Of a stretch of 64,000 bases of DNA, positions 34,207 to 50,640 are shown piece after piece. The notes beneath the pieces were generated by a model. The model was not told the DNA's origin. It saw only the letters and a program-made list of their open reading frames with translations, and made no database searches. The stretch lies in the IMG/VR virus record IMGVR_UViG_3300024259_002152, positions 286,867 to 350,866 of that record; one strand, written 5' to 3'. Numbering within the stretch: position 1 is the stretch's first letter; every line of letters begins with the position of its first letter. Position numbers and translations under genes: made by a program.

Positions 34207-34728
34207 ATGTGCTTATCCACTGTAATGACAGATAAAGAAATGAAAAAAGAAGTAGCTACAATACCTAGAGAAGGGATAGTAGTCTATAAAATGGTGCAGG
34301 TAGGTAAAGAAGTATATATGACTGTAATTAAAAACGGAGTAAAAAATTTGGTAGTAGATAATAGATACTATCCAGTATTTTTCGGAAACGATCCGTATAA
34401 AGAAGGGGTAAATAAAGCCTGTACCGAACATAAACCATGGACAAGCCATCAAACACAAACAGATATAATAGATGGAGTAAAATATATAAGAAATGTAACA
34501 TATGAGTCAGGATTTCATTTCTATAAAACAAAATCTGCAGCAAAATCTCACCTAAAAGGACTTACAGAATGTAACACAAGAGATTATTGTCACCCCTGCT
34601 CAAGATATACTGTTATCGAATGTATTGTTAAAAAATCATGGATAACTGCCATAGGAACAGAAAATATTCTAAAACAATCAGAAGATGTTATTGTCGCTAA
34701 AAAAGCAATATTTCCGAAAGCAGCATAA
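34207..34728 (+). CDS. hypothetical protein
   Basis: MCLS...VYK...YESGFH phage-type motif. Confidence 0.7.
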   Translation: MCLSTVMTDKEMKKEVATIPREGIVVYKMVQVGKEVYMTVIKNGVKNLVVDNRYYPVFFGNDPYKEGVNKACTEHKPWTSHQTQTDIIDGVKYIRNVTYESGFHFYKTKSAAKSHLKGLTECNTRDYCHPCSRYTVIECIVKKSWITAIGTENILKQSEDVIVAKKAIFPKAA

Positions 34729-34938: not shown

Positions 34939-35433
34939 ATGTTCTACCAAAACCAAAAAAATATAAATACTATAGGGTGGTTGTTGATTGTAATAAACCT
35001 CCTCATAACAATATCTATAGGAATGAAATTTGGAATTATCTTTATTCTCCCTGTTCTAATAGGTATTATTATAACTGTTCTTGTATATAAGAAAAATACT
35101 AAAATTGGTAATATCCTCTGCACAAATTGTAAATACTTCAAAATCTCAACTATAGATACACTTTCAGAATGCTTAGCCCCCGAAAATACTAAAATAGATG
35201 ATACTTCACTAGGAACTATGAAAGTAAAAACAAAAATACAAATACAAACTAATGAAAATTTAAATGAAAATAATGACTGTAAATTCTATAAATATGATTG
35301 CAGCCTTTATGCAATAGATGAAGAACATGCGTCAGAAATATGCTGGGAAACAGGAGCAATATTTACAGTAATAACTATTTTTCTAACTTTTATTGCTCTG
35401 ACTATAAGATTAGTATTCGTAATGCCAAAATAA
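34939..35433 (+). CDS. membrane protein with Cys motif
   Basis: TM segments, CTNCKY. Confidence 0.65.
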   Translation: MFYQNQKNINTIGWLLIVINLLITISIGMKFGIIFILPVLIGIIITVLVYKKNTKIGNILCTNCKYFKISTIDTLSECLAPENTKIDDTSLGTMKVKTKIQIQTNENLNENNDCKFYKYDCSLYAIDEEHASEICWETGAIFTVITIFLTFIALTIRLVFVMPK

Positions 35434-35593
35434 ATAATAAGGAATAATACTATGAAACTACTCGATAAATTCGAAAAACACTGGCATAAATATGAAAAAA
35501 TCTATAACAAAGCTTTCTGGATATTTATTATATCTATACTTGCAATTATTGCCATAGGATGGATAGGTATATTTATTTAAATCGCGGAGAAAA

Positions 35594-36403
35594 ATGATGA
35601 ACCCTACCCCCTCAAATGATCTTCCAGAAAATGCTCAAGCATATGGGAAAAGAATCGGACAAAATTTTGTTAAAAAATTTGATGCGAAAGAACAATCCTA
35701 TAACCTTAATGCAAGAGGACTACAAACAGGTAAAGCAGCTACTGCTATAGCAGAAATGTTATACCAATGCTATAAAAAAGAACAAGAAACAAACTGCGGA
35801 GAATTACTGAATAAATGGATAGCTGAACACCTGTGGGCAATTATACTACTAGACTATATGCCTAAACTACAAAAAATATGGCAATATCTATATGATAATA
35901 AATATAATAAAAGTCATACTCTGCCCTATGGAGATGCAGATGGAAATATATGGGTAGAATACCCTAAACAAATATCTAAATGGACAGATAATAGAAAAAT
36001 CCTTATACATACCTCTCATTGCACTATGGCCGATGATAATACTCATATCTTTATGATGGATAAAGATAGTGCTCTAAATACCCTAGAAATTAGAACTGTA
36101 TGGCCAAGACAAAATCTTAAAGGCGGATATAAAGTAGAAAAATCAGAAGAATATCCAAATGGATGGTTCTCGTGGGGAGATGATAGAGATGTTAAAATAC
36201 CTTCTCTGCAAACCTATAGAGATAGAAATTTCGAATATGGATACCATGATGCAACAGATAAAGGATATGTCGTAACTCTACAAACTATTGGAGAACCAAA
36301 AGCAAAAAGAGCAGATATATATCAACAAGAAATACAACATGCCGTATGGCTTATTAATATTATGGAAAATGTCATAGAAGATAAAGTCAATACTAAACCC
36401 TAA
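35594..36403 (+). CDS. hypothetical protein
   Basis: GGAG RBS, 269 aa. Confidence 0.75.
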   Translation: MMNPTPSNDLPENAQAYGKRIGQNFVKKFDAKEQSYNLNARGLQTGKAATAIAEMLYQCYKKEQETNCGELLNKWIAEHLWAIILLDYMPKLQKIWQYLYDNKYNKSHTLPYGDADGNIWVEYPKQISKWTDNRKILIHTSHCTMADDNTHIFMMDKDSALNTLEIRTVWPRQNLKGGYKVEKSEEYPNGWFSWGDDRDVKIPSLQTYRDRNFEYGYHDATDKGYVVTLQTIGEPKAKRADIYQQEIQHAVWLINIMENVIEDKVNTKP

Positions 36404-36613
36404 CTAATTTCGCGGAAAATAATGTAAACCCAAACTACTACTAAAATGAATATATTCACTAACCTAATAGAAGCATTCGATAAAGCATGGAAACATCTAT
36501 CTAATACTAATAAAGTAATAATAACTACTCTACTTATTATACAAGCTATAAATGGACTACAAATAATCATAAGTATAATAAAATACATAACTTATAGTAT
36601 ATTATGATAGGAA

Positions 36614-36982
36614 ATGATAATGGAAGTAAATGAATCACTATACCCTAAGGCAGTATGTATCTTCTGTGAGCATTGTGTAGATGAAGAAGGAGATGAAGAA
36701 TTTGTCTTTCAATCAGATTGTGATACCTATCTATGTAAAAAACATCCCACTCAAAGAACTATTCATCCTGTTACTGGAAAACCTTGCTATGCCTTTCAAC
36801 ATGAAGAACATATAGAATGGAATGTAGGAAGTAAATATAAATTATGTATACATGTTAATCATGATGGACAATGCTCACATTTCTCCAAAATAGGAGAAAA
36901 AGAACAAAAAGAAAGGAAATTGTCAGTAGGTGAGCAAGAAGAAGTAGTAGAAGTAGAAGAAGTAGAAGAAGGAAATATATAG
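36614..36982 (+). CDS. Cys-rich hypothetical protein
   Basis: CIFCEH...HPVTG...NHDGQC. Confidence 0.65.
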   Translation: MIMEVNESLYPKAVCIFCEHCVDEEGDEEFVFQSDCDTYLCKKHPTQRTIHPVTGKPCYAFQHEEHIEWNVGSKYKLCIHVNHDGQCSHFSKIGEKEQKERKLSVGEQEEVVEVEEVEEGNI

Positions 36983-36998
36983 TGTTCCACGTGGAACA
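36983..36998. promoter_or_regulatory. parS: parS centromere-like site
   Basis: Perfect 16-bp palindrome TGTTCCACGTGGAACA matching the bacterial chromosomal parS consensus. Confidence 0.85.
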
Positions 36999-37252
36999 AT
37001 TGTAGTAGGTTATAGGAAAAATGGAAATTCCTGGCACCAAAATAGGAAATTCATTATATCAATTTTTTGGTTCTATATAGAAAAATTAGCGTTTCATTAC
37101 ACTAAAATTTTTGGTTCTCGGTGGACCTTTAAAAAATGGATCAAAAATTCCCCAAAAAATAATAGATTTTTTTATTAAAATTTTCAATAAAGGAGAAATA
37201 AATTGTCTGGAAAATCGATAGTGTCGATAAATTCCAGACCACGAGAAAACAC

Positions 37253-37281
37253 TTGCAAAAGTGATTAGTAAATGGTAAAAT
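37253..37281 (+). promoter_or_regulatory. sigma70-type promoter between two inverted-repeat pairs
   Basis: TTGCAA-17-TAAAAT. Confidence 0.55.
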
Positions 37282-37382
37282 AGAGAAGAATCGATAGTCT
37301 GGAAAAAATAGGAGCAAAAATAATTCCAGACAAGTATTTTACCATCACCCCTTGATTTCCCCCTAGGAGAAAGGTTTTTGAG

Positions 37383-38102
37383 ATGATTGAGATTATGTAC
37401 TCACCAGAAGATGTAGGCAAAGAAGTTAAAAATAGTCATGGAAAACATACAATAATTAGAAAATACCATATGACAGAAAAAGAAAAGGAGATAGCACGAA
37501 ATAAGTGGTTAGTAATAACAGCAAAAATAAATAAAAGAATAGTTAAGCAAGCAGGAGATTTATTTTATAATCCATACCGAAAGGGAGTATATTACTATCA
37601 GATCTATTCTATGTTCTTATTAGGAGCTAATAAATGGCATAGTTTAAATGCTGTCCTAAAGAAGATGGAAAGTATTATGTCAAAGATAGTAGTTAAAAAA
37701 GATGGATATCAGATAACAGCATGGGACAAATTTCGAGGTAAGGGTAGCAGAGACAGTGCTATCAGATGTAAAGATTTTGTTGGCAGGGTGCAGGAGAATA
37801 TGGTATTCTTTCAACGTCTTACTAGACTACATCCTTATGGTTATAAGCTATGGCAGGTTGGTTCTGCTGTAGATATTAAGAGAGTAAGTAGAAGAGGGTT
37901 TGTAAGTGGTTGTTATTACTACAGGTTATCTACTTATGGCACATCAAAAGAAGCATTACCTATAAGAGATTATAGAGAATTTAACTTTCCTCAGCATGAG
38001 AGGAAATATGTTAGTTATAAGTTCATTGGGACTGTTATCACTAAAGATAAAGTCATAACTGAAGGGAAAATAAATGAGATGTCACAAATGCAATCAGGAT
38101 AG
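37383..38102 (+). CDS. basic hypothetical protein next to the candidate origin
   Basis: 239 aa, K/R/Y rich. Confidence 0.75.
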   Translation: MIEIMYSPEDVGKEVKNSHGKHTIIRKYHMTEKEKEIARNKWLVITAKINKRIVKQAGDLFYNPYRKGVYYYQIYSMFLLGANKWHSLNAVLKKMESIMSKIVVKKDGYQITAWDKFRGKGSRDSAIRCKDFVGRVQENMVFFQRLTRLHPYGYKLWQVGSAVDIKRVSRRGFVSGCYYYRLSTYGTSKEALPIRDYREFNFPQHERKYVSYKFIGTVITKDKVITEGKINEMSQMQSG

Positions 38103-38640
38103 TATAAAGATTGATAATGGACATATTATTTGTGAGATATGTGGTTTAGATATAGATGTTAGTTCTTTAGAAGATCCATTATTTGATTTATTCTTCTATA
38201 ATGAAAATTTGCAAGAAGCAGAGAAGTTAGGTAAGGAGTCGTATATAGAGGGTAAGGACATGGGAGATAATCCTTATTCTATTGCTTCTGATCAGCTTAT
38301 GCTTAATAAGAGGTGGGAGGCAGGTTATAGCACCGAAAGGGATATAGAGGAAAAAGAGGCATTATTAATTTCTGCCGAAAATTTAAAAAATGTCCTTGAA
38401 AAACTAGAAAAACTACAAACTGCTATAAAAGAGAAGGAACAAGTCTCTGATCAGACCATAGAAGAACTAAGAGAAGGTAATTCTATTCTCGTAGAAAGAA
38501 TAGATAATCTTAATTCTCTTTGTGTTAATTTAGAGAAGATAGTTAAAAGAGTTAAGATACTAGAAAAGACAAAATATCTCCTTCCTGGGCGATACAGGAG
38601 GGAAATAGCTAAGATTACGATAAAAATTCCAGACAAGTGA
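38074..38640 (+). CDS. zinc-ribbon plus coiled-coil protein
   Basis: CHKC...CEICG; NPY...WEAGY. Confidence 0.7.
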   Translation: MRCHKCNQDSIKIDNGHIICEICGLDIDVSSLEDPLFDLFFYNENLQEAEKLGKESYIEGKDMGDNPYSIASDQLMLNKRWEAGYSTERDIEEKEALLISAENLKNVLEKLEKLQTAIKEKEQVSDQTIEELREGNSILVERIDNLNSLCVNLEKIVKRVKILEKTKYLLPGRYRREIAKITIKIPDK

Positions 38641-38697
38641 TTTTTTATAATGGTATAATGTGGCAATAGTAAAAGCAGTTATATTAGGAGAAAAATC

Positions 38698-39198
38698 ATG
38701 AGTGACTTTCAGAGTAAAGCTAATGAAGTAGTAACATATGGAGCATTGGGTTTTGGAGCAAGTATAGTTGTATGTTTTATAATTGTTTGGTATCCTGCTT
38801 TAATGCTAACATTATCGGCTGTTGATCATATGTGTGATTGGAAGAATGTAACGACATTTCGTGAGCAGGGGTATTCTCGTCAAATGCCTGAAGGTTATTA
38901 TGGAGAATATCTTGGTTTGTCTGACGCTGAGGCTCGTGCAAAGTATGCAAAAAGTTTAGATGATCCAATTGTTCTTATAGATGAAGATAAATTTAATAGT
39001 GCCTGTTGGGCAGGAGTTATAATAGGGATTATTATATGGGGGTTTCTTGTCTTTTTAGTTAAGAATATAAAGGACACATGGCCTATTGTGGTAGGTTTGT
39101 ATGTGTTTTCTTTCTATCCTTTCATGAAGTGGATAGGATGGGCAATAGACTCTGATGCTGGTCGTTTTCCTGGTGTTGATTGGATACCATGGTGGTAA
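38698..39198 (+). CDS. membrane protein
   Basis: AGGAG RBS, three TM segments. Confidence 0.7.
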   Translation: MSDFQSKANEVVTYGALGFGASIVVCFIIVWYPALMLTLSAVDHMCDWKNVTTFREQGYSRQMPEGYYGEYLGLSDAEARAKYAKSLDDPIVLIDEDKFNSACWAGVIIGIIIWGFLVFLVKNIKDTWPIVVGLYVFSFYPFMKWIGWAIDSDAGRFPGVDWIPWW

Positions 39199-39231
39199 AT
39201 TCCAGACAATGAGTTTTAGTTAACAGTAGGT

Positions 39232-40242
39232 ATGGAAACTACAATGACTATTGAAGTAAAAAAATTATCGGACATGGATGCTGCTCCTATTCGTAGAAAT
39301 AGGACTTGGTTTAATGACATTGATATCATCTACGGATACAGTCAGTTCCCAGACTATTTGGAATGGGGAATGCCAAAGGGTAAGATCAGCTTATGGGCAG
39401 GAACTGCTGGAGTAGGTAAAAGTCGTCTTTGTATCGATGTTGCTAAGAATTTTAGCACTCGTTATGAGAATGGTAGAGTTCTTTATTTCCAAACAGAATC
39501 GACTATGGAAGATTTTGCTGGATGGGCAAAGGATACTAAGAAGTATGATAATATTGAGTGTTGTGGGGCTAGTGCGATAGAAGATATTATCGATGTTATT
39601 TATCTTAAGAAACCCAAGCTAGTTTTTATTGATAGTGTTAATGAAATTGATGAATTTGAGAATGGTAATAAAAGAGAGGCTCGAAGACTTATTAAGGGAG
39701 AGAATAGTAAGCCAGGATTGAAAAAAGCAGCTAATGATGTTGGTTGTCATATTATTTTGTTAGGTCAAATAAATCAAGATGGCAAGACTATTAAGGGTGG
39801 TACATCTTTACCTCACTTAGTAGATATAGCATTGCATCTTCGTTCCTTATCTCCTGAGGAGGTAAAGGGTTATGTAGGAGAAGCATTATCGGGAATGTTT
39901 AGGATGTCGGTAGGTGAGAAGCATAGACATGGTTCTAAGGAGAATTTTGCTTGGTTCCAGCATCATGATAATGGGGTTAGGCAGTGGTCGATTCGTTCTA
40001 ATGAGAATATTAAATGGCAAGAGACTTTTCATGATGCTCCACCACCTCCGCCTCCTATTGAGCCAGGGCATAATATTGATGGGACTTGGGACCAAAGCTC
40101 TCCTGAGTTTAGAGCTTCATGTGAGGCATATAAGAGAAGTCCTGAGGGTCAGAAATTGATTAGACAGTGGTATAAAGATCATAGTCCTACTGCTTATCAG
40201 AAGATAGGAAACTTCTTTGATGAGATATTTAATAAGAAGTAA
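39232..40242 (+). CDS. RadA/Sms-like RecA-fold ATPase
   Basis: GTAGVGKS, LYFQTE, FIDSVN, GQINQDG, HLVD. Confidence 0.8.
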   Translation: METTMTIEVKKLSDMDAAPIRRNRTWFNDIDIIYGYSQFPDYLEWGMPKGKISLWAGTAGVGKSRLCIDVAKNFSTRYENGRVLYFQTESTMEDFAGWAKDTKKYDNIECCGASAIEDIIDVIYLKKPKLVFIDSVNEIDEFENGNKREARRLIKGENSKPGLKKAANDVGCHIILLGQINQDGKTIKGGTSLPHLVDIALHLRSLSPEEVKGYVGEALSGMFRMSVGEKHRHGSKENFAWFQHHDNGVRQWSIRSNENIKWQETFHDAPPPPPPIEPGHNIDGTWDQSSPEFRASCEAYKRSPEGQKLIRQWYKDHSPTAYQKIGNFFDEIFNKK

Positions 40243-40884: not shown

Positions 40885-41039
40885 ATGGTTAAAATGAAAG
40901 GTTAAATAAATGACAAGAGAGCAGAAAGATAGGGAACAGGATATGAAGAATTTCTATTCTCTAGCAAAGAAGTATGGTTTTTATAGTCTTTGTCTATGTG
41001 ATGGAGATTGTGGTAAAGATTGTAGTTGTAAGTAAGTAT

Positions 41040-41111
41040 TACCTCGTAGTGTAATTGGTAACACAATGGTTTTTGGAGCCATTATTAGAGGTTCAAGTCC
41101 TCTCGGGGTAG
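41040..41111 (+). tRNA. tRNA-Gln(TTG)
   Basis: Cloverleaf, loop TTTTGGA. Confidence 0.9.
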
Positions 41112-41127
41112 TTTGAAAAGTAAATAT

Positions 41128-41200
41128 TCCAGGATAGCTCAGTTGGAAGAGCGCTTGATTGTTAATCAAGATGTCGCAGGTTCAAGTCCTGCTCCTGGAG
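41128..41200 (+). tRNA. tRNA-Asn(GTT)
   Basis: Cloverleaf, loop TTGTTAA. Confidence 0.93.
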
Positions 41201-41206
41201 CTTGAA

Positions 41207-41242
41207 CTGTTGCACCGAATGCAACGGTTAGTTCTTTGAAAA
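41207..41242 (+). promoter_or_regulatory. boxB-like hairpin plus boxA-like antitermination element
   Basis: CTGTTGCA-CCGAA-TGCAACGG then GTTCTTTGAAAA. Confidence 0.5.
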
Positions 41243-41371
41243 TTGAATAGGGGTTCCTAGAAGGAACACACAAGTTGTTGTTATGAGTATTAACACATGA
41301 GAGATCTTCGGAGCTATGTTAGTTCGGAGTTTTGAGCTTATATAGCACCGAATTTGATCTCTCATGTTTCT

Positions 41372-41442
41372 AGGGCTATGAATTAACGGAAAATTACCGT
41401 CCTGATATGGCGGGTATATAGGTTCGATTCCTATTGGCCCTA
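41372..41442 (+). tRNA. tRNA-Ile(GAT), atypical D arm
   Basis: Cloverleaf, loop CTGATAT. Confidence 0.75.
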
Positions 41443-41533
41443 TTCTAAAAAAGTTATCTTTATAGAAAATAAAAGAGGATTCCAAAATAGATAACAGAAT
41501 ATAAGGTATATTTATAATTTTTGGAGAATAAAT

Positions 41534-42070
41534 ATGCCTTCTAAAGATAGAGAAAAAGTAAAAGAGAGTAGAAAAAACAATTATGAAAAATATAAAGATT
41601 ATTATTTAGAAAAAAGTAAATATCAAAAAGCAAAAAATAATATTTTTTATTTCGAATATAAGAAAAAATTAAAATGTTCTAAGTGTCCTGAAAATCATAT
41701 ATCTTGTTTAGAATTCCACCACTTAGATCCCAATGAAAAAGAATATACCATTTCTAATTTAAGAACAAAATCTTTGAAAAAAGCTATGAAAGAAATGAAA
41801 AAATGTATTATTCTATGTTCAAATTGTCATAAAAAGGAACATTGGAATGATAATAAAATAGATGAAATGAAACAAAATATTGTTTTATTTGAAGAGAAAA
41901 AAAAGATATCGAAAGAACAAAATAATATTTGTAGAGGTTGTGGCAAGGATAGAGATGAAACTTTATTTGTAAAAAAAAGATGTTTTTGTGAGCAATGTTA
42001 TAGAGATTATCAGAAGGAGAAGATGAGAGAAAGAAGAGAAAAACAATTTAAGCAGGTTGATTGTGAGTAA
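41534..42070 (+). CDS. HNH endonuclease
   Basis: CSKC...LEFHHLDP...LCSNCH. Confidence 0.88.
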   Translation: MPSKDREKVKESRKNNYEKYKDYYLEKSKYQKAKNNIFYFEYKKKLKCSKCPENHISCLEFHHLDPNEKEYTISNLRTKSLKKAMKEMKKCIILCSNCHKKEHWNDNKIDEMKQNIVLFEEKKKISKEQNNICRGCGKDRDETLFVKKRCFCEQCYRDYQKEKMRERREKQFKQVDCE

Positions 42071-42183
42071 GTTATCGATTTTAGGAATCCGAGAATGTAG
42101 GTTCGAGTCCTACTCCCCTGATAACCAGGGGATAGCTTAATTGGCAGAGCGCGAAAAACGCTTATTCCTCCACCATATCTGCT
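42051..42183 (+). ncRNA. Y RNA (YrlA)-like RNA 1 with permuted tRNA module
   Basis: Bulged terminal stem, GTTATCG, T arm - closed acceptor - D arm. Confidence 0.75.
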
Positions 42184-42188
42184 TTTTT

Positions 42189-42262
42189 ACCCGTGTAGTT
42201 TAGTTGGCTAAAGCGTCTGTCCTACAAACAGAAGATCGTTGGTTCGAGTCCAACCTCGGGTA
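42189..42262 (+). tRNA. tRNA-Val(TAC)
   Basis: Cloverleaf, loop CCTACAA. Confidence 0.9.
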
Positions 42263-42263
42263 T

Positions 42264-42337
42264 TCATTAGTAGTTTAACGGGCAAAACACTCCAGCGCTT
42301 ATTGGTAGAGATGATGGTTCGAGTCCATCCTATTGAG
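42264..42337 (+). ncRNA. tRNA-like RNA with irregular anticodon arm
   Basis: Acceptor, D and T arms intact; no 5-bp/7-nt anticodon arm. Confidence 0.65.
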
Positions 42338-42339
42338 TT

Positions 42340-42458
42340 ACACAGGTTGATTGTAGAAGGTTATCGGTCAAAACATTTTTTAAACAAGAATGCACAGTAG
42401 GGTTCAAGTCCTTACACCCCAGTAATGGGTCTTATCTTTTACCACCACATATCTGTGT
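42340..42458 (+). ncRNA. Y RNA-like RNA 2 (T arm plus short hairpin)
   Basis: Same terminal stems and GTTATCG; GTAGGGTTCAAGTCCTTAC. Confidence 0.7.
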
Positions 42459-42461
42459 TTT

Positions 42462-42532
42462 CCCTCGTTGGTGTAATGGAAGCATAGGACATTGTCGATG
42501 TTCAGGCAGCGGATCGTTACCGCTACGAGGGG
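42462..42532 (+). tRNA. tRNA-Asp(GTC)
   Basis: Cloverleaf, loop TTGTCGA, atypical T loop. Confidence 0.82.
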
Positions 42533-42537
42533 TTTAA

Positions 42538-42621
42538 GGGAGTCCGCCAAAGCGGGAGAGTTGGGACAGGTTGTAACCCTGTTGTCGAAAGACTGAGTAG
42601 GTTCGAATCCTATGACTCCCA
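42538..42621 (+). tRNA. tRNA-Tyr(GTA)
   Basis: Loop TTGTAAC, long variable arm. Confidence 0.88.
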
Positions 42622-42624
42622 TTT

Positions 42625-42711
42625 GGAAGAGTTGGCAGAGTTGGCATGCCGAGCTGATTGCTAATCAGTCCTGCCTTCGGGGCAGTGCAGGATCGTCCCC
42701 TGTCTCTTCCG
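42625..42711 (+). tRNA. tRNA-Ser(GCT)
   Basis: Loop TTGCTAA, long variable arm, atypical T loop. Confidence 0.82.
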
Positions 42712-42717
42712 TTCATT

Positions 42718-42812
42718 GGATAGCGTGGTAACTATTGGTAGGTTACACTAGTCTTGAAAACTAGGTTCCCTTTCACAAAAGGGGAATAAGAGTTCGATTC
42801 TCTTCCTATCCG
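42718..42812 (+). tRNA. tRNA-Ser(TGA)
   Basis: Loop CTTGAAA, long variable arm. Confidence 0.88.
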
Positions 42813-42814
42813 TT

Positions 42815-42945
42815 AAGAGATCATATGGTGGAATTGGTATACACCTCTCCTATGCAGGGGAGCTTGATTGCGTTCAAGCGGTTTGATTCCGAAAATAGGT
42901 TGGATTCCTATATTAATACTGGTTCGAGTCCAGTTGTGATCTCTT
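42815..42945 (+). ncRNA. tRNA-like RNA with four hairpins between D and T arms
   Basis: 11-bp terminal stem, Leu-type D arm, canonical T arm. Confidence 0.7.
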
Positions 42946-42950
42946 ATTAC

Positions 42951-43023
42951 GGCGGTATAGTATAGTTGGTTAAAACATTCCTTTCATACGGGAAAGTCCC
43001 TGGTTCGATCCCAGGTATCGCTA
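42951..43023 (+). tRNA. tRNA-Met(CAT) (elongator or Ile2)
   Basis: Loop TTCATAC. Confidence 0.88.
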
Positions 43024-43054
43024 TTGTTAAAAACAAGTATGTAGCACCGAATAA

Positions 43055-43125
43055 GGCCCATTAGTTTAGTGGTAGAACGGTAGGTTTTCAGCCTATTAGC
43101 AGGGGTTCGACTCCCCTATGGGTCA
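43055..43125 (+). tRNA. tRNA-Glu(TTC)
   Basis: Loop TTTTCAG. Confidence 0.9.
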
Positions 43126-43131
43126 GTTTTT

Positions 43132-43203
43132 GCTCCTATCGTCTAGTGGTTAGGACATCTGGTTCTCAGCCAGAAAACGTGAGTTCGATCCTCATTAGGA
43201 GTA
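43132..43203 (+). tRNA. tRNA-Glu(CTC)
   Basis: Loop TTCTCAG. Confidence 0.92.
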
Positions 43204-43400
43204 TTTTCCCAAGTTTTTTCTCTGGTTTGACCACTCTAACTTTTTACTACTAAAAGGATTAGAGCGGCGAGTAAAAAACCTCATAAAAACTAATAAAAAA
43301 GCAGGAAAAAACTATTGGAAAGTGAAAGAAAAGACGATAGATTATTACTATAGTAACATTGGTTATGATAGTCTTTTACAAGTAAATAGAGAGAGAATTT

Positions 43401-43468
43401 ATACGGGTTGAAGTTTTAAAGTTATCGTTAAGGTCAACAAAATGCTTTTTAACATCCCACATCCGTAT
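43401..43468 (+). ncRNA. Y RNA-like RNA 3 (minimal, stem only)
   Basis: ATACGGGTTG/CACATCCGTAT plus GTTATCG. Confidence 0.65.
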
Positions 43469-43482
43469 TTTTAGAACAAGCA

Positions 43483-43720
43483 TGTGGGTTGATTGATGTC
43501 GGTTATCGATTATTCTATTTTTAATGCGTGTAAGAATCGAAAAAGCGAATCAGGTAACAGTCAAGTTGAGATAACGCCAATCGATATATTTGACGGGAAG
43601 ACTGGCTAGTTTTGAGAGAACCAGGTTGAAATATACTAATGGCTATGCACTTGAAATTTCCTAAGACAATGATTTTTAGCTCAATAACAGAGCGTTTCCG
43701 ATTTCTTCCACACATCCACA
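43483..43720 (+). ncRNA. Y RNA-like RNA 4 (long insert, D-arm remnant)
   Basis: TGTGGGTTG/CACATCCACA plus GTTATCG; TAGCTCAATAACAGAGC near 3' end. Confidence 0.65.
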
Positions 43721-43730
43721 GGCGTTTTTT

Positions 43731-43805
43731 TGTCGGGTAGTTTAAGCATAAAATGGCCACCGTAAGGTGGTTGATGGTAGGTGAGATGCCTGCCCCCTGA
43801 CACCA
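43731..43805 (+). ncRNA. tRNA-like RNA, anticodon loop replaced by GNRA tetraloop, ends CCA
   Basis: GGCCACC-GTAA-GGTGGTT arm. Confidence 0.7.
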
Positions 43806-43906
43806 TATTGGGTAGTTTAAATGTAAAATGCCTGACAAGGACCATAGGTAACCATTCCGTGGTCAAGTTCAGGAGATGATAGGATCAATGCCTATCCCCG
43901 ATGCCA
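43806..43906 (+). ncRNA. tRNA-like RNA with extended anticodon arm, ends CCA
   Basis: CCTGA...TCAGG encloses GACCAT/GTGGTC helix. Confidence 0.7.
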
Positions 43907-44013
43907 TTGGGTAGCTTATAGGTAAAGCAGTTGTTGAGTTATATCTCGATTTATAGTGTTGAGATAATATGACTTAATAACAGAAAAGGCGGTTCGATTC
44001 CCCTTCCCGATAT
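43905..44013 (+). ncRNA. tRNA-like RNA with about 20-bp anticodon arm
   Basis: GTTGTTGAGTTATA/TATGACTTAATAAC plus TCTCGA/TTGAGA. Confidence 0.7.
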
Positions 44014-44102
44014 TGCGGGGTTGAGTAGTCCGGCTTAACTCACGGGTCTCATAAGCCCGTAGATCCTTCAAGATCTCGGAGGTTCAAATCCTCCCCCCGC
44101 TA
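44014..44102 (+). tRNA. tRNA-Met(CAT), initiator-like, long variable arm
   Basis: T1:T72 mismatch, loop CTCATAA, T loop TTCAAAT. Confidence 0.85.
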
Positions 44103-44159
44103 TTACGAGTATTTTTATACTCATAAACAATGATGCGGCAACGGTTGCCGTGAAGGGAT

Positions 44160-44378
44160 GTGTGTGTTATGGTAAGGTGTTTTACAAAGACCGTTTCAAC
44201 GTACGGAAAACAAATTGGACATGGTGCCGATGGAGAGCCTATCGTTGAGCCCAAACTTCGACTAACAGCCGAAGAGTTTGATGTATCTACGGAAGATATG
44301 TATAAGCTAGAGGGTGCAACTAAGGCAATTTTTGATGAGCGTCTAGCTGATCAGATGAAGAAAGAAATAGATGACTAA
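44160..44378 (+). CDS. hypothetical protein
   Basis: ORF in gap between tRNAs; start uncertain. Confidence 0.5.
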   Translation: MCVMVRCFTKTVSTYGKQIGHGADGEPIVEPKLRLTAEEFDVSTEDMYKLEGATKAIFDERLADQMKKEIDD

Positions 44379-44518
44379 TCTATTTTTATGATGTAGCAAT
44401 TTTTTAGTATTGAAAAAGGTAGTTGTTCGGTATTTTGTGGTGAGTATACACAGATTCTTCAACCATAATTAATCTTAATCTTAGGATATCGACTGGCCAA
44501 CTATCTTTTTCTTTTTTA

Positions 44519-44593
44519 CAGGCCGTAGCTCAGCTTGGTCAGAGCGCCGCATTTGGGATGCGGAAGTCGGACGTTCAAATCGTCTCGGCCTGA
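44519..44593 (+). tRNA. tRNA-Pro(TGG)
   Basis: Loop TTTGGGA. Confidence 0.93.
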
Positions 44594-44629
44594 GTTTTTC
44601 ATTACATAGCACCGAATAGGAGATCTCAT

Positions 44630-44827
44630 ATGATGCCTACTGGTCGCGTTAAATGGTTCAATAAGAAGAAGGGTTATGGTTTTGTAGACCATGAAGGTAA
44701 TGATATCTTTATTCATCATTCTGAGATAGAAGGCACAAATCTTCTTGAAGATAATGATCTTATCACTTTCGATATTGTCGATGGTGAAAAAGGTCTTAAG
44801 GCAAAAAAAATAACTAAAATGGGTTGA
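44630..44827 (+). CDS. csp: cold-shock domain protein
   Basis: [13 protein letters not shown] (RNP1), DIFIHHS (RNP2). Confidence 0.93.
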
Positions 44828-44944
44828 TTTAGAGTAGGTTATCGAATTTAACGAAAGGATATGGGTTCGAGTCCCATTGCTCACCTCGGTGAGTATAGCT
44901 CAATTGGCAGAGTTTACATTGTTTATTCTTACTAACACATCCAT
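44819..44944 (+). ncRNA. Y RNA (YrlA)-like RNA 5 with permuted tRNA module
   Basis: T arm ATGGGTTCGAGTCCCAT, TGCTCAC/GTGAGTA, D arm TAGCTCAATTGGCAGAG. Confidence 0.75.
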
Positions 44945-44958
44945 AAGTTATTTTTTAT

Positions 44959-45031
44959 GGGGGCTTAGCTCAGTCGGGAGAGCGATTGCTTTGCAAGCAA
45001 TAGGTCGCAGGTTCGATTCCTGTAGCCTCCA
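44959..45031 (+). tRNA. tRNA-Ala(TGC)
   Basis: Loop TTTGCAA, G3:U70. Confidence 0.93.
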
Positions 45032-45048
45032 CTTTTCATTTCCAGTAT

Positions 45049-45121
45049 GGGCCATTGGTGAAACTGGGATCACACTTGGTTTGCACCCAGGAATTACGGG
45101 TTCGAGTCCCGTATGTGTCCA
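45049..45121 (+). tRNA. tRNA-Ala(TGC), bulged acceptor stem
   Basis: Loop TTTGCAC, G3:U pair. Confidence 0.8.
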
Positions 45122-45127
45122 TTTCTT

Positions 45128-45198
45128 GGGCCTATAGTTCAATGGTAGAACGCACTCCTTATAAGGGTGTCACGCAAGTTCAATTCTTGCTAGGCCTA
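45128..45198 (+). tRNA. tRNA-Ile(TAT)
   Basis: Loop CTTATAA. Confidence 0.88.
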
Positions 45199-45202
45199 CT
45201 TA

Positions 45203-45309
45203 GACAGGTTGAATGTGAAAAAGTTATCGTAAGTTCGAATCTTATCTCCCCCTCATTTATGGGGGAGTTGCTCAATGGGAGCGTCTTTTTTTACTATCCC
45301 ACATCTGTC
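45203..45309 (+). ncRNA. Y RNA (YrlA)-like RNA 6 with permuted tRNA module
   Basis: GACAGGTTGAATG...CACATCTGTC; T arm, CTCCCCC/GGGGGAG, D arm. Confidence 0.78.
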
Positions 45310-45315
45310 ATTTTC

Positions 45316-45387
45316 GCCTTCTTAGTTCAATTGGCAGAATACTAGATTTGTAATCTTGAGATCTCAGTTCGATTCTGAGAGAAGGCT
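45316..45387 (+). tRNA. tRNA-Thr(TGT)
   Basis: Loop TTTGTAA. Confidence 0.88.
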
Positions 45388-45391
45388 TCAT

Positions 45392-45463
45392 GGAAAGATG
45401 GTGTAGGTGGTCGCACGCGGCACTGAAAATGCCGAGGTACCAGTTCAACTCTGGTTCTTTCCA
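45392..45463 (+). tRNA. tRNA-Phe(GAA)
   Basis: Loop CTGAAAA. Confidence 0.88.
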
Positions 45464-45540
45464 TTTTTTCCAGACAACGCATTTCTCGAAATGATTATAT
45501 GTAGCACCGAATAAGTTATTTCTTATAGGAGATTTGTTCA

Positions 45541-45795
45541 ATGTTTTTTGCAATAAAATTAGCTCTTATGTTGGTATGGTTGGGTATGGGAGCATTTGGT
45601 TATCATATCTCTTATGAATACCAAATACATCTTTATAGGAGAAAATGGAGTAATAATCAAAATCTCATTCACCTATTAAGAGTGCTCTTAGGTCCTATTA
45701 ATTGGGTTTGGTGTTATTTGACAAGAAAAGGAGAAATGACTTACTGGGCAGATTATCAAAGATCTTCTGCATATGACCATAGGAAAGAAGAGTAG
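45541..45795 (+). CDS. small membrane protein
   Basis: AGGAG RBS, N-terminal TM. Confidence 0.65.
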   Translation: MFFAIKLALMLVWLGMGAFGYHISYEYQIHLYRRKWSNNQNLIHLLRVLLGPINWVWCYLTRKGEMTYWADYQRSSAYDHRKEE

Positions 45796-45800
45796 TTTTT

Positions 45801-45874
45801 AGGTCCATAGCTCAGCTAGGTAGAGCATCTGGCTTTTAACCAGAGAGTCGTGGGTTCGATTCCCACTGGACCTA
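45801..45874 (+). tRNA. tRNA-Lys(TTT)
   Basis: Loop CTTTTAA. Confidence 0.94.
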
Positions 45875-45881
45875 TTAGAGA

Positions 45882-45956
45882 GGGGATGAAGCTTATTGTG
45901 GTAAAGCACCAGGTTCTTACCCTGGGTTCTTGAGAGTTCGAATCTCTCTATCCCCA
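45882..45956 (+). tRNA. tRNA-Lys(CTT)
   Basis: Loop TTCTTAC. Confidence 0.87.
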
Positions 45957-45959
45957 TTC

Positions 45960-46092
45960 AAGGTGGCAGCATGGTAAAGCTGGAATTGACGACACGGCTG
46001 ACGCGAGGGAACCCCTCGATGCGTGGAGATCGACACCCACTTAGATATATGGCTTACCACTGTGTATTGAAAAAGTCAATTCTTTCCGCCTT
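45960..46092 (+). ncRNA. unknown multi-helix structured RNA
   Basis: AAGGTGG/CCGCCTT, GAATTGAC/GTCAATTC, internal hairpins. Confidence 0.55.
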
Positions 46093-46096
46093 TTAT

Positions 46097-46168
46097 GTCA
46101 GAGGTAGTGTAATGGAAGCACACAAGATTGTGGATCTTGGAGAGCGAGTTCAAATCTCGTCCTTTGAC
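46097..46168 (+). tRNA. tRNA-His(GTG)
   Basis: Loop TTGTGGA, G-1:C73. Confidence 0.9.
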
Positions 46169-46174
46169 CTTTTT

Positions 46175-46246
46175 GAGCAAGTAGCCAAGCGGCCAAGGCA
46201 ATAGGTTGCAACCCTATGATCGTGGGTCCGAGTCCCACCTTGCTCT
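46175..46246 (+). tRNA. tRNA-Cys(GCA)
   Basis: Loop TTGCAAC, U73. Confidence 0.9.
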
Positions 46247-46439
46247 TTTTCCAGACAATGAGTTTCTTAGAATGGTATAGTAGACAAGGGCGTATTAGTC
46301 CTTTTGTTGAGCAGATGCTTAACTACCCATATTAATGTCGTAATTATAATCGACAGAAGGAGTTAGGTGATTTGCTCAACATTTATTTTATCACAAAAAG
46401 TATAGTAAAATTTGTGACATTTTGTCGGAAAAATAAAAA

Positions 46440-46943
46440 ATGACTAGCGAAGAAATAAAAATAGCCAATAAGACAGCCAGAAGTGGTGGAGCAGTAGGTA
46501 AAAATGCTATTCTTCCTAGGATCATAAAAGCTAGATATTCTCCTGTAAGTTGTGAGATTCTAGATTTTGGAGCGGGACCTAAAGCTCTACATACTCTAGA
46601 GTTAGATAAAAACAACTTTCGGTGTTGGCCTTATGAGATGGGAGATAATTATGATTCTGATATCCATTTTAATGATAAAGAGTTAGGTGATCGGCAATTT
46701 GACCTAGTTTTTGCTTCTAATGTCATCAATACTCTGAGTTCTTTATCTGCTATTCGAGAGACTCTAGATAAGATCTATAGTTTTGTAGATACTTATGGAG
46801 TAGCGTTGATTAATCTTCCTGTTTCTCCGAGAAAATATAAAGGTCTCACCAAAGAGTTACTTATGGATCTTATTATGGAGAAATTTAATTCGGTAATGGT
46901 AGAGAACCACAATGGGACTAAGGTATTTTTTTGTGAGAAGTAA
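46440..46943 (+). CDS. class I SAM-dependent methyltransferase
   Basis: ILDFGAG, FDLVFASNVIN. Confidence 0.75.
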   Translation: MTSEEIKIANKTARSGGAVGKNAILPRIIKARYSPVSCEILDFGAGPKALHTLELDKNNFRCWPYEMGDNYDSDIHFNDKELGDRQFDLVFASNVINTLSSLSAIRETLDKIYSFVDTYGVALINLPVSPRKYKGLTKELLMDLIMEKFNSVMVENHNGTKVFFCEK

Positions 46944-46948
46944 TAGTT

Positions 46949-47455
46949 ATGCATAGAAGACTTCCAATAGGAAAACTAATAGGAGGATCTATTTATGTTC
47001 ATAGGGACTATGTAGATCGTGTAGTTCCTGGGGATATTTTCCGAGAAGCGAAGAAAATTGGACATATTAAAGATTTTCATGAATGGTATCCTCAATGGAC
47101 AATAGTCAAATGGAACAAATATAAAGAGATGGTCTCATTTGTTTATTGTCCTTATTTTGATAGACAATTTGAGCCAGGGATTCATCATGTAGTTACTGTT
47201 GATTTAAGGACTAGGACTAGTCAAATAAGGTGTTATAGGGGTATTAAGAATCGTCCTATTTATCATTATAAATGGCTTATGGTTGGTGTTGGTTATAGGA
47301 AATTTCAAGTAAGTCAATGTATGATGAGGAGTTATGAGATTGAAAGAGTTCTAAAGAAATACAATATTAATAGATCAAAAATTGGTTATAGGAGATATTG
47401 GGATGATGTAGTTATTCCTTTAATTCAGAAAGAGAGGATTCCAGATGGTAGATAA
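46949..47455 (+). CDS. protein resembling the accessory domain of phosphorothioation-associated methyltransferases
   Basis: GKLIGGSIYVH, SFVYCPYFDRQFEP, NRPIYHYK. Confidence 0.55.
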   Translation: MHRRLPIGKLIGGSIYVHRDYVDRVVPGDIFREAKKIGHIKDFHEWYPQWTIVKWNKYKEMVSFVYCPYFDRQFEPGIHHVVTVDLRTRTSQIRCYRGIKNRPIYHYKWLMVGVGYRKFQVSQCMMRSYEIERVLKKYNINRSKIGYRRYWDDVVIPLIQKERIPDGR

Positions 47456-47690
47456 AGAATCAAAGATGATAAATACTATGTTAGTATATAGTATTAAGTG
47501 TTTTAAGTGTGGAATTCTTGAGGAAGAGATGGTAAAAGCAGGTCCAATAAAGTTTTGTAAGAAATGTTTTGGGGAAGAGTTTAAGGATTGTGTATCTCCG
47601 AAAGGACAGATATATTCTGGCTCTAAGGTATATAAAGAATGGATAGGTAAATATAGAATGCATATGAATGCATTAACTCATGATAGATAA
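47445..47690 (+). CDS. zinc-finger hypothetical protein
   Basis: CFKC...CKKC. Confidence 0.6.
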   Translation: MVDKESKMINTMLVYSIKCFKCGILEEEMVKAGPIKFCKKCFGEEFKDCVSPKGQIYSGSKVYKEWIGKYRMHMNALTHDR

Positions 47691-47717
47691 ATGTAAACCT
47701 TTTGTTGTAGGAGAATT

Positions 47718-47897
47718 ATGATGGCTATGGATCATTATGGTAACACGGTAGATGTAGGTGACACTGTAAGAAAGGTCGGTTACAGTGATGAGTATACTGT
47801 AATTGATACAGAGTATGGAGGAGAAATGCTCAGTTTGAGTGGGGAGAATTGGGTAGAAAATAATGTTCGTGTTCAGGATGTGATGAAAATAGGTTAA
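47718..47897 (+). CDS. hypothetical protein (59 aa)
   Basis: AGGAG RBS; DHYGNTVDVGDTV. Confidence 0.6.
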   Translation: MMAMDHYGNTVDVGDTVRKVGYSDEYTVIDTEYGGEMLSLSGENWVENNVRVQDVMKIG

Positions 47898-47912
47898 TTT
47901 AAGCGGGTGTAA

Positions 47913-47983
47913 TCTCCATAAGTGTATTGGTCGCACGTGACCCTTCCAAGGTTGAAGGCTCAGTTCGATTCTGAGATGGAGAA
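47913..47983 (+). tRNA. tRNA-Gly(TCC), atypical acceptor
   Basis: Loop CTTCCAA. Confidence 0.8.
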
Positions 47984-48074
47984 TTTATTTTGGCTATATG
48001 CAAAAATAAATAAAGGTATATAGCATGTTTCTCCGAATATATTAATAGTTAATGATATATTTTGGAGAAATAAA

Positions 48075-48659
48075 ATGAGAAAAAGAACAAGTCCAATATG
48101 GACAATATCTAAAGATAAGCTAGAAAGGATTGTTAAAAATAGTGATAGTCTCGCTAAAGTCTTAAAACAAATTAATTTAGATCCATATGGTAGCGGTAGC
48201 CGTTATCGATCTTTGAAAGAAAGATTAAAAATAGATAGTATTGATTACTCTCATATACGGTTGGGATCTTTCTCTAATAGTGGTAGAAATTTTGATAGTA
48301 AGGCAATTTCTTTAAAAGAAATTATGGTGGAAAATTCTACTTATAGTAGAAATCATCTTAAGCGAAGACTACTAGAAAATAATATATTAGAAAATTGTTG
48401 TGCCATATGTGGTCAAGAACCCACTTGGAAAAATATAAAATTAGTAATGGTGTTAGATCATATTAATGGTGTTAGAAATGATAACAGATTAGAGAATTTG
48501 AGATTATTATGTCCTAATTGCAATAGTCAACAGAAAACTTTTGCAGGAAAATGTAATAAGAGACCTCTTCCTGTATGCAAAAATTGCGGTAAAGAGGTAT
48601 CTAGAAGATCAAAAACTAAATTATGTAAAAATTGTTATGTAAATAGGAGAATAACATGA
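48075..48659 (+). CDS. HNH endonuclease
   Basis: CAICG...LDHINGVRNDNRLENLRLLCPNC. Confidence 0.92.
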   Translation: MRKRTSPIWTISKDKLERIVKNSDSLAKVLKQINLDPYGSGSRYRSLKERLKIDSIDYSHIRLGSFSNSGRNFDSKAISLKEIMVENSTYSRNHLKRRLLENNILENCCAICGQEPTWKNIKLVMVLDHINGVRNDNRLENLRLLCPNCNSQQKTFAGKCNKRPLPVCKNCGKEVSRRSKTKLCKNCYVNRRIT

Positions 48660-48862
48660 TAATTACTCTTGATGAAAATACGATGATAAATACTAATTTC
48701 ATACAATATGTGGATAAAAAAGATGATCAAACAGTTGTTATAACAATGGCAGATAGTAAGAGATATGAAAAAAAAGAAACAATGGAACAGGTTAAAAAAT
48801 GGTTATTACATTATGAACAACATCCCCCTGTTACTCATAATATAAAGATAGTTGATAAATAA
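48656..48862 (+). CDS. FlbD-like small protein
   Basis: INTNFIQYV...TVVITM...KETMEQV. Confidence 0.5.
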   Translation: MIITLDENTMINTNFIQYVDKKDDQTVVITMADSKRYEKKETMEQVKKWLLHYEQHPPVTHNIKIVDK

Positions 48863-48870
48863 GATTTTTT

Positions 48871-48942
48871 GCAGCTATGGTATAACGGATATTACGTGAC
48901 CTTGCCAAGGTCAAAATGTGAGTTCGATTCTCACTAGTTGCT
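48871..48942 (+). tRNA. tRNA-Gly(GCC)
   Basis: Loop TTGCCAA. Confidence 0.9.
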
Positions 48943-48947
48943 TACAA

Positions 48948-49021
48948 GCCCAGGTAGCCCAAATGGCAGAGGCACATGCCTTAGGAGCATGGTGATGGTG
49001 GTTCGAATCCACTTCTGGGTA
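48948..49021 (+). tRNA. tRNA-Leu(TAG), short variable loop
   Basis: Loop CTTAGGA. Confidence 0.9.
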
Positions 49022-49067
49022 TTTATTAGTGTTTTAGAAATAAGTAGCACCGAATCGGAGTAATATT

Positions 49068-49304
49068 ATGGATGTTGTAATGCTTTTACTTAGTACTCTT
49101 TCTATTATAATTGGTATATATTGTATAATAGTGAGTTTTGTTCCAATTTTAGGTATTGCTTGGGGTTTTGTACCATCTATTATTGGAATAGTATTAGGAG
49201 CTATTGCTGGTAGTACAGCAGGAGTAGTTCTCAATATAATAGCTATTGTTATTATGATTGTTTGGAATCTTATTTGTATTTTGTTTTTAGCTAAGAATGG
49301 TTAA
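49068..49304 (+). CDS. small membrane protein
   Basis: GGAG RBS, almost entirely hydrophobic. Confidence 0.65.
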   Translation: MDVVMLLLSTLSIIIGIYCIIVSFVPILGIAWGFVPSIIGIVLGAIAGSTAGVVLNIIAIVIMIVWNLICILFLAKNG

Positions 49305-49318
49305 AAAAACTGTTTTTT

Positions 49319-49393
49319 ACTCCTGTAGCTCAATTGGATTAGAGCATCTCCCTTCTAAGGAGAAAGTTAGGGGTTCGAGTCCTCTCAGGAGTG
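49319..49393 (+). tRNA. tRNA-Arg(TCT)
   Basis: Loop CTTCTAA. Confidence 0.93.
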
Positions 49394-49603
49394 TTTTTCT
49401 CTATTTTTCACTTTTCCCGAAAAATATAAATCTTTATTACAAAGGAAGTTATAGAGAATTTTTAATATTTATAACAGGAAAATAGTGAATTTACTTGATT
49501 ATTCTTTCACTTTTGACTATATTATACATAGTCATATGACAAGTGTAGTAGTTAGTAAATGTTAACCTAAGTAGTATGTGGCAGAGCCACGGAGGTAACA
49601 ACA

Positions 49604-50026: not shown

Positions 50027-50050
50027 AAATCTAAAAACATTTAAGTTTTT

Positions 50051-50094
50051 AATGCCCAGTCTTCTTAGGAAACAGGATGATTGGGCATTTTTTT
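50051..50094 (+). terminator. intrinsic terminator
   Basis: AATGCCCAGTC/GATTGGGCATT plus T tract. Confidence 0.7.
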
Positions 50095-50557: not shown

Positions 50558-50560
50558 TAA

Positions 50561-50635: not shown

Positions 50636-50640
50636 TTGCT

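What the first reader, a model, noticed from the sequence alone, without database searches (positions are those of the whole stretch)
36983..36998. Perfect chromosomal-type parS site in a phage genome
Seen: the palindrome TGTTCCACGTGGAACA directly after a stop codon, at the left edge of a 400-bp intergenic region. Known: this matches the bacterial chromosomal parS bound by ParB/Spo0J, normally found near the origin and used to load SMC. No parA or canonical parB is in the window. Inference: the element may borrow host ParB/SMC to segregate as a plasmid-like prophage, or titrate host ParB.
Basis: partly seen in the sequence, partly recalled or inferred. Interest (0 to 1): 0.7.

Follow-up and report, generated by a model that had tools for sequence, protein, structure and literature searches.

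The report
Orphan host-type parS in a jumbo phage
An uncultured marine jumbo phage carries one exact copy of the bacterial chromosome "centromere" sequence (parS) but no partition genes, so it probably offers a landing site to its host's ParB protein; close relatives lack the site, so it is a recent add-on, not a core feature.

Summary
TGTTCCACGTGGAACA lies at 36983-36998, directly after the stop codon of a 122-aa orphan ORF and at the left edge of a 400-bp intergenic region. It is letter-for-letter the perfect parS2/parS3 of Pseudomonas aeruginosa. It occurs once in the 350,866-bp virus record, with no 1-mismatch copies, and is identical in at least 6 independent assemblies. The record (a seawater jumbo phage, 33% GC, 31 tRNAs) has no ParB, ParA, tubulin or integrase; the weak "ParA" hit is RecA. 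The site is absent from every relative examined: two large related phage records, one of them complete at 548 kb, and about 48 related loci. It sits where a lineage-specific gene block meets a conserved control region. Across IMG/VR the exact palindrome occurs in at least 119 stretches, against 3 and 12 for two composition-matched control palindromes. Only 4 of 88 such records encode ParB, and the sites favour non-coding DNA. Phage phi29 is a published precedent for host Spo0J binding parS on a phage. My best reading is a real, recently gained, orphan parS that recruits host ParB. Its benefit and the host are unknown. The plasmid-prophage idea has no support.

The parts
36614..36982 (+). 122-aa Cys-rich ORF with an acidic (E/V-repeat) tail. 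It is the last gene of a lineage-specific accessory block, and its TAG stop abuts the palindrome.
   Evidence: ORF list. No Pfam or PHROG hit. The only database match is itself. Genes 34939-36982 have no counterpart at the equivalent place in two relatives.
36983..36998 (.). Perfect 16-bp palindrome TGTTCCACGTGGAACA, a chromosomal-type parS. It is single-copy and orphan (no partition genes in the record).
   Evidence: Identical to P. aeruginosa parS2/parS3. Identical in independent assemblies. Absent from relatives.
37061..37118 (+). Pair of direct repeats AATTTTTTGGTTCT / AAATTTTTGGTTCT, 44 nt apart. Several relatives carry a different repeated word at the same place.
   Evidence: family D7; alignment.
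37116..37185 (+). Conserved box (TCTCGGTGGACC...GGATCAAAAAT) followed by an AT-rich palindromic tract (AATAATAGATTTTTTTATTAAAA).
   Evidence: Alignment of about 36 relatives; AT-rich palindrome recurs in relatives.
37205..37239 (.). Inverted repeat 1, GTCTGGAA-N19-TTCCAGAC, upstream of the -35 element.
   Evidence: Its arms change in concert with those of repeat 2 across relatives.
37253..37281 (+). Sigma-70-like promoter TTGCAA-17-TAAAAT with a TG extension, conserved in relatives as TTGACA/TTGCAA ... TAnAAT.
   Evidence: alignment.
37297..37331 (.). Inverted repeat 2, GTCTGGAA-N19-TTCCAGAC, between the -10 element and the ribosome-binding site.
   Evidence: This repeat pair occurs nowhere else in the 350 kb.
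37383..38102 (+). Conserved 239-aa protein, the first gene of a conserved block. Residues about 60-190 weakly resemble a winged-helix fold.
   Evidence: 202 homologues. AlphaFold2 model with pLDDT 83. Only weak winged-helix matches, Z 4-5.7, and no Foldseek hit.
38074..40242 (+). Rest of the conserved block: 188-aa and 166-aa proteins of unknown function, and a 336-aa RecA/DnaB-fold ATPase (39232-40242).
   Evidence: Pfam AAA_25/DnaB_C; PHROG DnaB-like and UvsX-like; synteny with relatives.

Best explanation
The 16-mer is a genuine bacterial chromosome-type centromere (parS) that this phage lineage gained recently. It lies at the junction between a lineage-specific accessory gene block and a conserved control region. 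The phage makes no ParA or ParB, so the site would work as an orphan landing pad. In the infected cell, the host's ParB would bind the palindrome, close into CTP-dependent clamps and spread onto neighbouring phage DNA. That would couple the phage genome to the host ParA positioning system and/or to SMC loading, as phi29 does with Spo0J. It could also dampen the conserved promoter about 255-270 bp downstream. Shown here: the sequence identity, single-copy status, lack of phage partition genes, non-conservation in relatives, and the general excess of such orphan sites in viral contigs. Inferred: ParB binding, and any benefit to the phage.
For: The site is identical to experimentally characterised parS sites. 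One parS is reported to be sufficient for ParB function, and a ParB complex at a single parS is reported to influence promoters at a distance. An exact hit in this 33% GC genome is very unlikely by chance: 0 in 20 simulations, and about 1e-3 by my analytic estimate. The site is stable in all assemblies of this phage. There is no ParB_N, no ParA (the weak hit is RecA), no tubulin and no integrase in the record. A complete relative also has no ParB. In IMG/VR the exact palindrome occurs in at least 119 stretches, which fall into about 90 flank clusters, against 3 and 12 for two composition-matched control palindromes. Only 4 of 88 such records, and 2 of 24 near-complete ones, encode ParB_N. These sites lie outside ORFs 38% of the time, against 14% for random positions. 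In one phage cluster the site keeps its place while its flanks diverge. Precedent: the phi29 genome carries five parS sites used through host Spo0J.
Against: The site is absent, even with one mismatch allowed, from two related jumbo-phage records, one of them complete. It is also absent from about 48 related loci, including a relative at 75% protein identity with 503 nt of upstream sequence. It is a single site, whereas phi29 has five. The host is unknown, so the presence of a matching ParB is assumed. The GGAAC variant is documented here for proteobacteria and is the GC-richer form, which is odd for a 33% GC phage. The phage population shows no variation anywhere nearby, so fixation tells nothing about selection. 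The IMG/VR enrichment bears on phages in general, not on this site specifically.
Confidence: 0.45

Rival explanations
1. The palindrome is fortuitous or neutral. It arose by chance, or as a recombination scar at the junction between a variable and a conserved segment, and has no role. Host ParB may or may not touch it.
For: It is not conserved in any relative. It is a single copy and lies exactly at a variable/conserved boundary. The first-stage scan looked at many windows, so a 1-in-1000 event will sometimes turn up. The control palindromes do occur 3-12 times in IMG/VR.
Against: A 16/16 match to a pre-defined, functionally characterised site had zero expectation in simulations. The same palindrome is at least 10-40 times more common in viral contigs than matched controls, and is biased to non-coding DNA. 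So most such occurrences are not chance.
Confidence: 0.25
2. It acts as an RNA or DNA hairpin at the 3' end of the upstream gene (transcript stabiliser or terminator), and the resemblance to parS is coincidental.
For: It starts right after a stop codon. It folds at -9 kcal/mol, z = -2.3. The terminator scan flags it, but only on the minus strand.
Against: No T-run follows it on the coding (+) strand. Relatives have no GC-rich hairpin at the equivalent place. This reading does not explain identity to parS over all 16 positions.
Confidence: 0.08
3. It is an operator for a phage-encoded or other host DNA-binding protein, not ParB, and belongs to the dense control region upstream of the conserved 239-aa gene.
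For: The same intergenic region holds direct repeats, two co-varying inverted repeats and a conserved promoter. The downstream protein may contain a winged-helix domain.
Against: All conserved elements lie to the right of about 37116. The palindrome lies in the non-conserved left part and has no counterpart in relatives that keep the whole control region. The phage's own repeated motif (GTCTGGAA) is unrelated to it.
Confidence: 0.07
4. It is the partition site of a plasmid-like prophage with its own parAB encoded in the missing 27% of the genome.
For: The record is estimated to be only 73% complete.
Against: No ParB_N is found in this record, in a 62% complete relative or in a 100% complete 548-kb relative. 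There is no integrase, ParA or tubulin. Partition sites normally sit next to their parAB genes.
Confidence: 0.05

Closest known systems
Chromosomal parS of the ParABS system (e.g. P. aeruginosa parS2/parS3; consensus TGTTNCACGTGAAACA)
   Same: The 16-bp sequence is identical to parS2/parS3 of P. aeruginosa and to the P. putida parS. It matches the general consensus at 15 of 16 positions.
   Different: It lies in a phage genome, not next to oriC. There is no parAB operon, only a single copy, and binding is untested.
Bacillus phage phi29 parS sites bound by host Spo0J (spore entrapment)
   Same: A virulent-type phage without its own ParB carries host chromosome-type parS and exploits the host segregation protein.
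   Different: phi29 is a 19-kb phage of a spore former with five sites. Here there is one site in a marine phage of more than 350 kb whose host is unknown. The site is not shared by relatives, and no link to sporulation is known.
parABS partition cassettes of plasmid-prophages (P1, N15, actinobacteriophage parABS)
   Same: A centromere-like site on a phage genome.
   Different: Those elements encode their own ParA and ParB next to element-specific parS sites. None is present here.
Intrinsic terminator or 3' stem-loop
   Same: A short GC-containing hairpin right after a stop codon.
   Different: There is no U-tract on the coding strand, and no equivalent hairpin in relatives.

Membership tests
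Chromosomal-type parS (ParB/Spo0J binding site) | 16-bp palindrome matching tGTTNCACGTGAAACa or a documented species variant | tested here: met
   Exact identity to P. aeruginosa parS2/parS3 and the P. putida parS; 15 of 16 positions match the general consensus.
Chromosomal-type parS (ParB/Spo0J binding site) | Specifically bound by a ParB protein present in the same cell | not testable with these tools
   The host is unknown. No ParB is encoded by the phage.
Chromosomal-type parS (ParB/Spo0J binding site) | Origin-proximal location, or linkage to a parAB operon | tested here: not met
   No ParB_N and no ParA in 350 kb. GC skew is uniformly positive, with no switch that would mark an origin.
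Chromosomal-type parS (ParB/Spo0J binding site) | Conserved among related genomes | tested here: not met
   0 of 2 related large records at up to 1 mismatch. 0 of about 48 related loci at up to 2 mismatches.
phi29-type host-ParB hijack sites on a phage | Host-type parS on a phage that encodes no ParB | tested here: met
phi29-type host-ParB hijack sites on a phage | Several sites per genome | tested here: not met
   One exact site, none with 1 mismatch, and one with 2 mismatches, which is the chance level.
phi29-type host-ParB hijack sites on a phage | Host ParB-dependent positioning or segregation of phage DNA | not testable with these tools
   This needs the host and an infection experiment.
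Plasmid-prophage parABS cassette | Adjacent parA and parB genes | tested here: not met
   The neighbouring genes have no ParA or ParB domains. None is found in the record. The only P-loop hit is RecA.
Intrinsic (Rho-independent) terminator | GC-rich hairpin followed by a U-run on the transcribed strand | tested here: not met
   The hairpin is present, but it is followed by ATTGTAGTAGG on the + strand. The scan only flags the - strand.

The most novel reading that the evidence does not exclude
Orphan chromosome-type parS sites may be a widespread, selected feature of phage genomes. In IMG/VR they fall into about 90 independent flank clusters, at least 10-40 times more than matched control palindromes. 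More than 90% of the records carrying them lack ParB, and the sites are enriched in non-coding DNA. On this reading many phages, including this marine jumbo phage of more than 350 kb, plug their DNA into host ParB, ParA and SMC. Here the site would have been newly recruited beside a conserved control region that looks like an origin or regulatory hub (repeats, AT-rich tract, a possible winged-helix protein and a DnaB/RecA-fold ATPase), mimicking the chromosomal pairing of parS with the origin.
Probability: 0.3. Interest if true: 0.7.

Novelty: new member of a known kind. Interest (0 to 1): 0.45.

Why it matters
If host ParB really loads on this site, a giant marine phage would be using the host chromosome-segregation and condensin-loading machinery without encoding any of it. 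That would extend the phi29/Spo0J paradigm far beyond Bacillus and sporulation. The survey done in passing suggests that ParB-less parS sites are common and non-random in phage genomes. That would make "centromere mimicry" a general and easily testable phage strategy, relevant to carrier states, phage DNA positioning, SMC-based defence and interference with host division. For this particular site the claim is modest: one copy, gained recently, host unknown.

Tried and rejected
- **Close relatives in GenBank phages:** none found by megablast or by tblastn with a 926-aa protein.
- **Single-protein scans of viral contigs:** scans with the two flanking proteins found nothing. An alignment-based scan was needed.
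- **ParA lead:** the weak AAA_31/CbiA hit at genome 121.3 kb is RecA.
- **SMC_N lead:** there is only a sub-threshold hit in a 314-aa ORF, which I did not follow up.
- **Host identification failed:**
  - The conserved 239-aa protein is absent from GTDB species genomes.
  - The phage topoisomerase is only 36-45% identical to assorted MAGs, which is uninformative.
  - Sequencing runs say only 'seawater metagenome'.
- **Population variation at the junction:** laying Logan contigs showed only low coverage, plus a pile-up on the GAA-rich repeat at 36936-36971. No alternative junction appeared.
- **Function of the 239-aa protein:**
  - The protein atlas gave no hit.
  - Foldseek against PDB and AFDB gave no significant match.
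  - VIA-align gave only weak winged-helix similarity, Z below 6. I treat this as a lead only.
- **Rfam:** nothing in the region.
- **GC skew:** no origin signal.
- **Homology to other parS-bearing viral loci:** tblastx of 33-40.3 kb against the 119 loci gave no hits.

Full report
**1. The observation**

The palindrome TGTTCCACGTGGAACA is at window 36983-36998. The TAG stop of ORF 36614-36982 ends at 36982, and the next ORF starts at 37383, so the site is the first 16 bp of a 400-bp intergenic region.

It is the only match in the window even with three mismatches allowed.

The window is bases 286867-350866 of a 350,866-bp IMG/VR virus record, estimated 73% complete. The site is the only exact match to TGTTNCACGTGNAACA in that record. 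Genome-wide there are no 1-mismatch sites and one 2-mismatch site. Twenty first-order Markov simulations gave means of 0, 0.05 and 0.4.

The genome has ten perfect 16-bp palindromes. All the others are AT-rich, and this one is the most GC-rich.

The site and the whole intergenic region are identical in six independent assemblies from different samples and in low-coverage contigs of two further runs. The sequence is therefore real.

**2. What the sequence matches**

A full-text search shows that the exact 16-mer is the perfect parS2/parS3 of Pseudomonas aeruginosa and the parS of P. putida. Myxococcus differs only in the last base.

The general chromosomal consensus is TGTTNCACGTGAAACA, so the site matches 15 of 16 positions.

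The same review reports two further points: a single parS is sufficient for ParB function, and a ParB complex at one parS can influence promoters at a distance.

**3. The genome**

The record is a 33% GC seawater jumbo phage. Almost all genes are on one strand, and 31 tRNA genes lie at 41039-51150.

It has its own replication and recombination set:
- a PHP/Pol III alpha fragment
- a DnaB-like helicase
- a primase
- RecA
- a topoisomerase
- a CCA-adding-type enzyme

Six-frame profile searches of the whole record find none of the following:
- ParB_N
- ParA. The only weak hit is RecA.
- tubulin
- tyrosine integrase

A complete 548-kb relative and a 298-kb relative also lack ParB_N. Nothing suggests a plasmid-prophage lifestyle.

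**4. Context and relatives**

The downstream 239-aa gene has 202 homologues in metagenomes. From these I obtained 2 related viral records and about 46 metagenomic or assembly loci.

None of them has a parS-like site at up to 2 mismatches in the fetched DNA. The two large related records have none anywhere, even with 1 mismatch allowed.

Synteny shows a conserved block to the right: the 239-aa, 188-aa and 166-aa genes, a 336-aa RecA/DnaB-fold ATPase, and then the tRNAs. To the left the gene content is variable. Genes 34939-36982 have no counterpart in relatives, and the 122-aa ORF is an orphan.

Aligning the upstream 300 nt of about 36 relatives shows that only the right-hand part of the intergenic region (from about 37116) is conserved. 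That part holds, in order:
- a conserved box and an AT-rich palindromic tract
- inverted repeat 1 (37205-37239)
- a TTGCAA-17-TGnTAAAAT promoter (37253-37281)
- inverted repeat 2 (37297-37331)
- a Shine-Dalgarno site

All four repeat arms change in concert between phages, and this repeat pair occurs nowhere else in the genome.

The parS lies in the non-conserved left part. Relatives have no GC-rich hairpin at the equivalent place. The site is therefore a lineage-specific gain at the border between variable and conserved DNA.

**5. Is an orphan parS on a phage meaningful at all?**

The exact palindrome occurs in at least 119 stretches of IMG/VR. These stretches fall into about 90 clusters by flanking sequence.

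Two palindromic controls of identical base composition occur far less often:
- the mirror image occurs 3 times
- the same half-sites in swapped order occur 12 times

Of the 88 parS-bearing records I could test, only 4 encode ParB_N. Among the 24 records that are at least 90% complete, only 2 do, and none of those classed as having direct terminal repeats does.

The sites lie outside ORFs of 90 aa or more in 38% of cases, against 14% for random positions in the same loci.

In one cluster the site keeps its position between a terminator and a ribosome-binding site while the flanks diverge. That set was selected for having the site, so this is only suggestive.

Published precedent exists. The phi29 genome carries five parS sites through which host Spo0J helps move the phage genome into the prespore.

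**6. Mechanism**

The most likely reading is that host ParB recognises this palindrome, forms CTP-dependent clamps and spreads onto phage DNA. Possible consequences are:
- ParA-driven positioning or partition of phage DNA, for example in a carrier state
- SMC loading on a very large replicating genome
- titration of ParB away from the host chromosome
- damping of the conserved promoter about 255-270 bp downstream

These steps are inferred from what is known of ParABS and from phi29. None is shown here.

The following count against a strong claim:
- the site is not conserved in relatives
- there is only one copy
- the host is unknown
- the GGAAC variant is the GC-richer form, documented here for proteobacteria

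Rival readings, each detailed with its evidence in the Rival explanations section:
- chance or a neutral scar
- a 3' hairpin: -9 kcal/mol, but no U-tract on the coding strand
- an operator for another protein
- a missing parAB cassette

**7. Verdict**

The host-ParB hijack idea is plausible and indirectly supported. The plasmid-prophage idea is unsupported.

I class the site as a new member of a known kind, the phi29-like phage-borne host parS. Interest is moderate for this site. Interest is higher for the general pattern of ParB-less parS sites in phage genomes that emerged from the controls.

Noticed in passing
window 37205-37239 and 37297-37331 (with promoter 37253-37281): Two inverted repeats, GTCTGGAA-N19-TTCCAGAC, bracket a conserved sigma-70-like promoter upstream of the 239-aa gene. 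About 30 relatives keep the layout, but all four arms change together (CCTGGAA, TATGGGA, TCTGGTA, TGTGGA, CTGGACA). The pair occurs nowhere else in the 350 kb. It looks like an operator or origin element read by a co-evolving phage protein, possibly the downstream protein with its weak winged-helix resemblance.
   Followed up: partly
IMG/VR loci L003-L121, controls L203-L217: The exact parS palindrome is at least 10-40 times more frequent in viral contigs than two composition-matched control palindromes (at least 119 vs 3 and 12). Only 4 of 88 such records encode ParB_N, and the sites are enriched outside ORFs (38% vs 14%). Orphan parS may be a general phage feature.
   Followed up: partly
related loci L130-L164, L188-L192: Many independent metagenome contigs of related phages begin 150-290 nt upstream of the 239-aa gene, just left of the conserved control region. 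This recurrent assembly break suggests hypervariable DNA, or possibly a physical end, to the left. It is unexplained.
   Followed up: no
window 41039-51150: An array of 31 tRNA genes. It includes tRNA-Ile(TAT), a gene with an undetermined anticodon (42263-42338) and an unusually long 91-nt tRNA-Met (44013-44103). The array accounts for the local rise in GC to 41%.
   Followed up: no
window 37061-37074 and 37105-37118: A pair of 14-nt direct repeats 44 nt apart. Several relatives carry a different repeated word at the same place (e.g. AAATACTGGTT, AAAAAGTAGGTA, TGAAGCAC), which is iteron-like.
   Followed up: no
window 34207-34728; L173 7657-10482: The 173-aa protein belongs to a family present in about four tandem paralogous copies in the closest large relative. 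This marks the left side as a variable, expanding gene block.
   Followed up: no
window 36925-36974: A 9-nt periodic GAA/GTA repeat encodes the acidic tail of the 122-aa ORF. It attracts contigs from unrelated organisms when reads are laid, producing a false depth spike at 36838-37004.
   Followed up: yes
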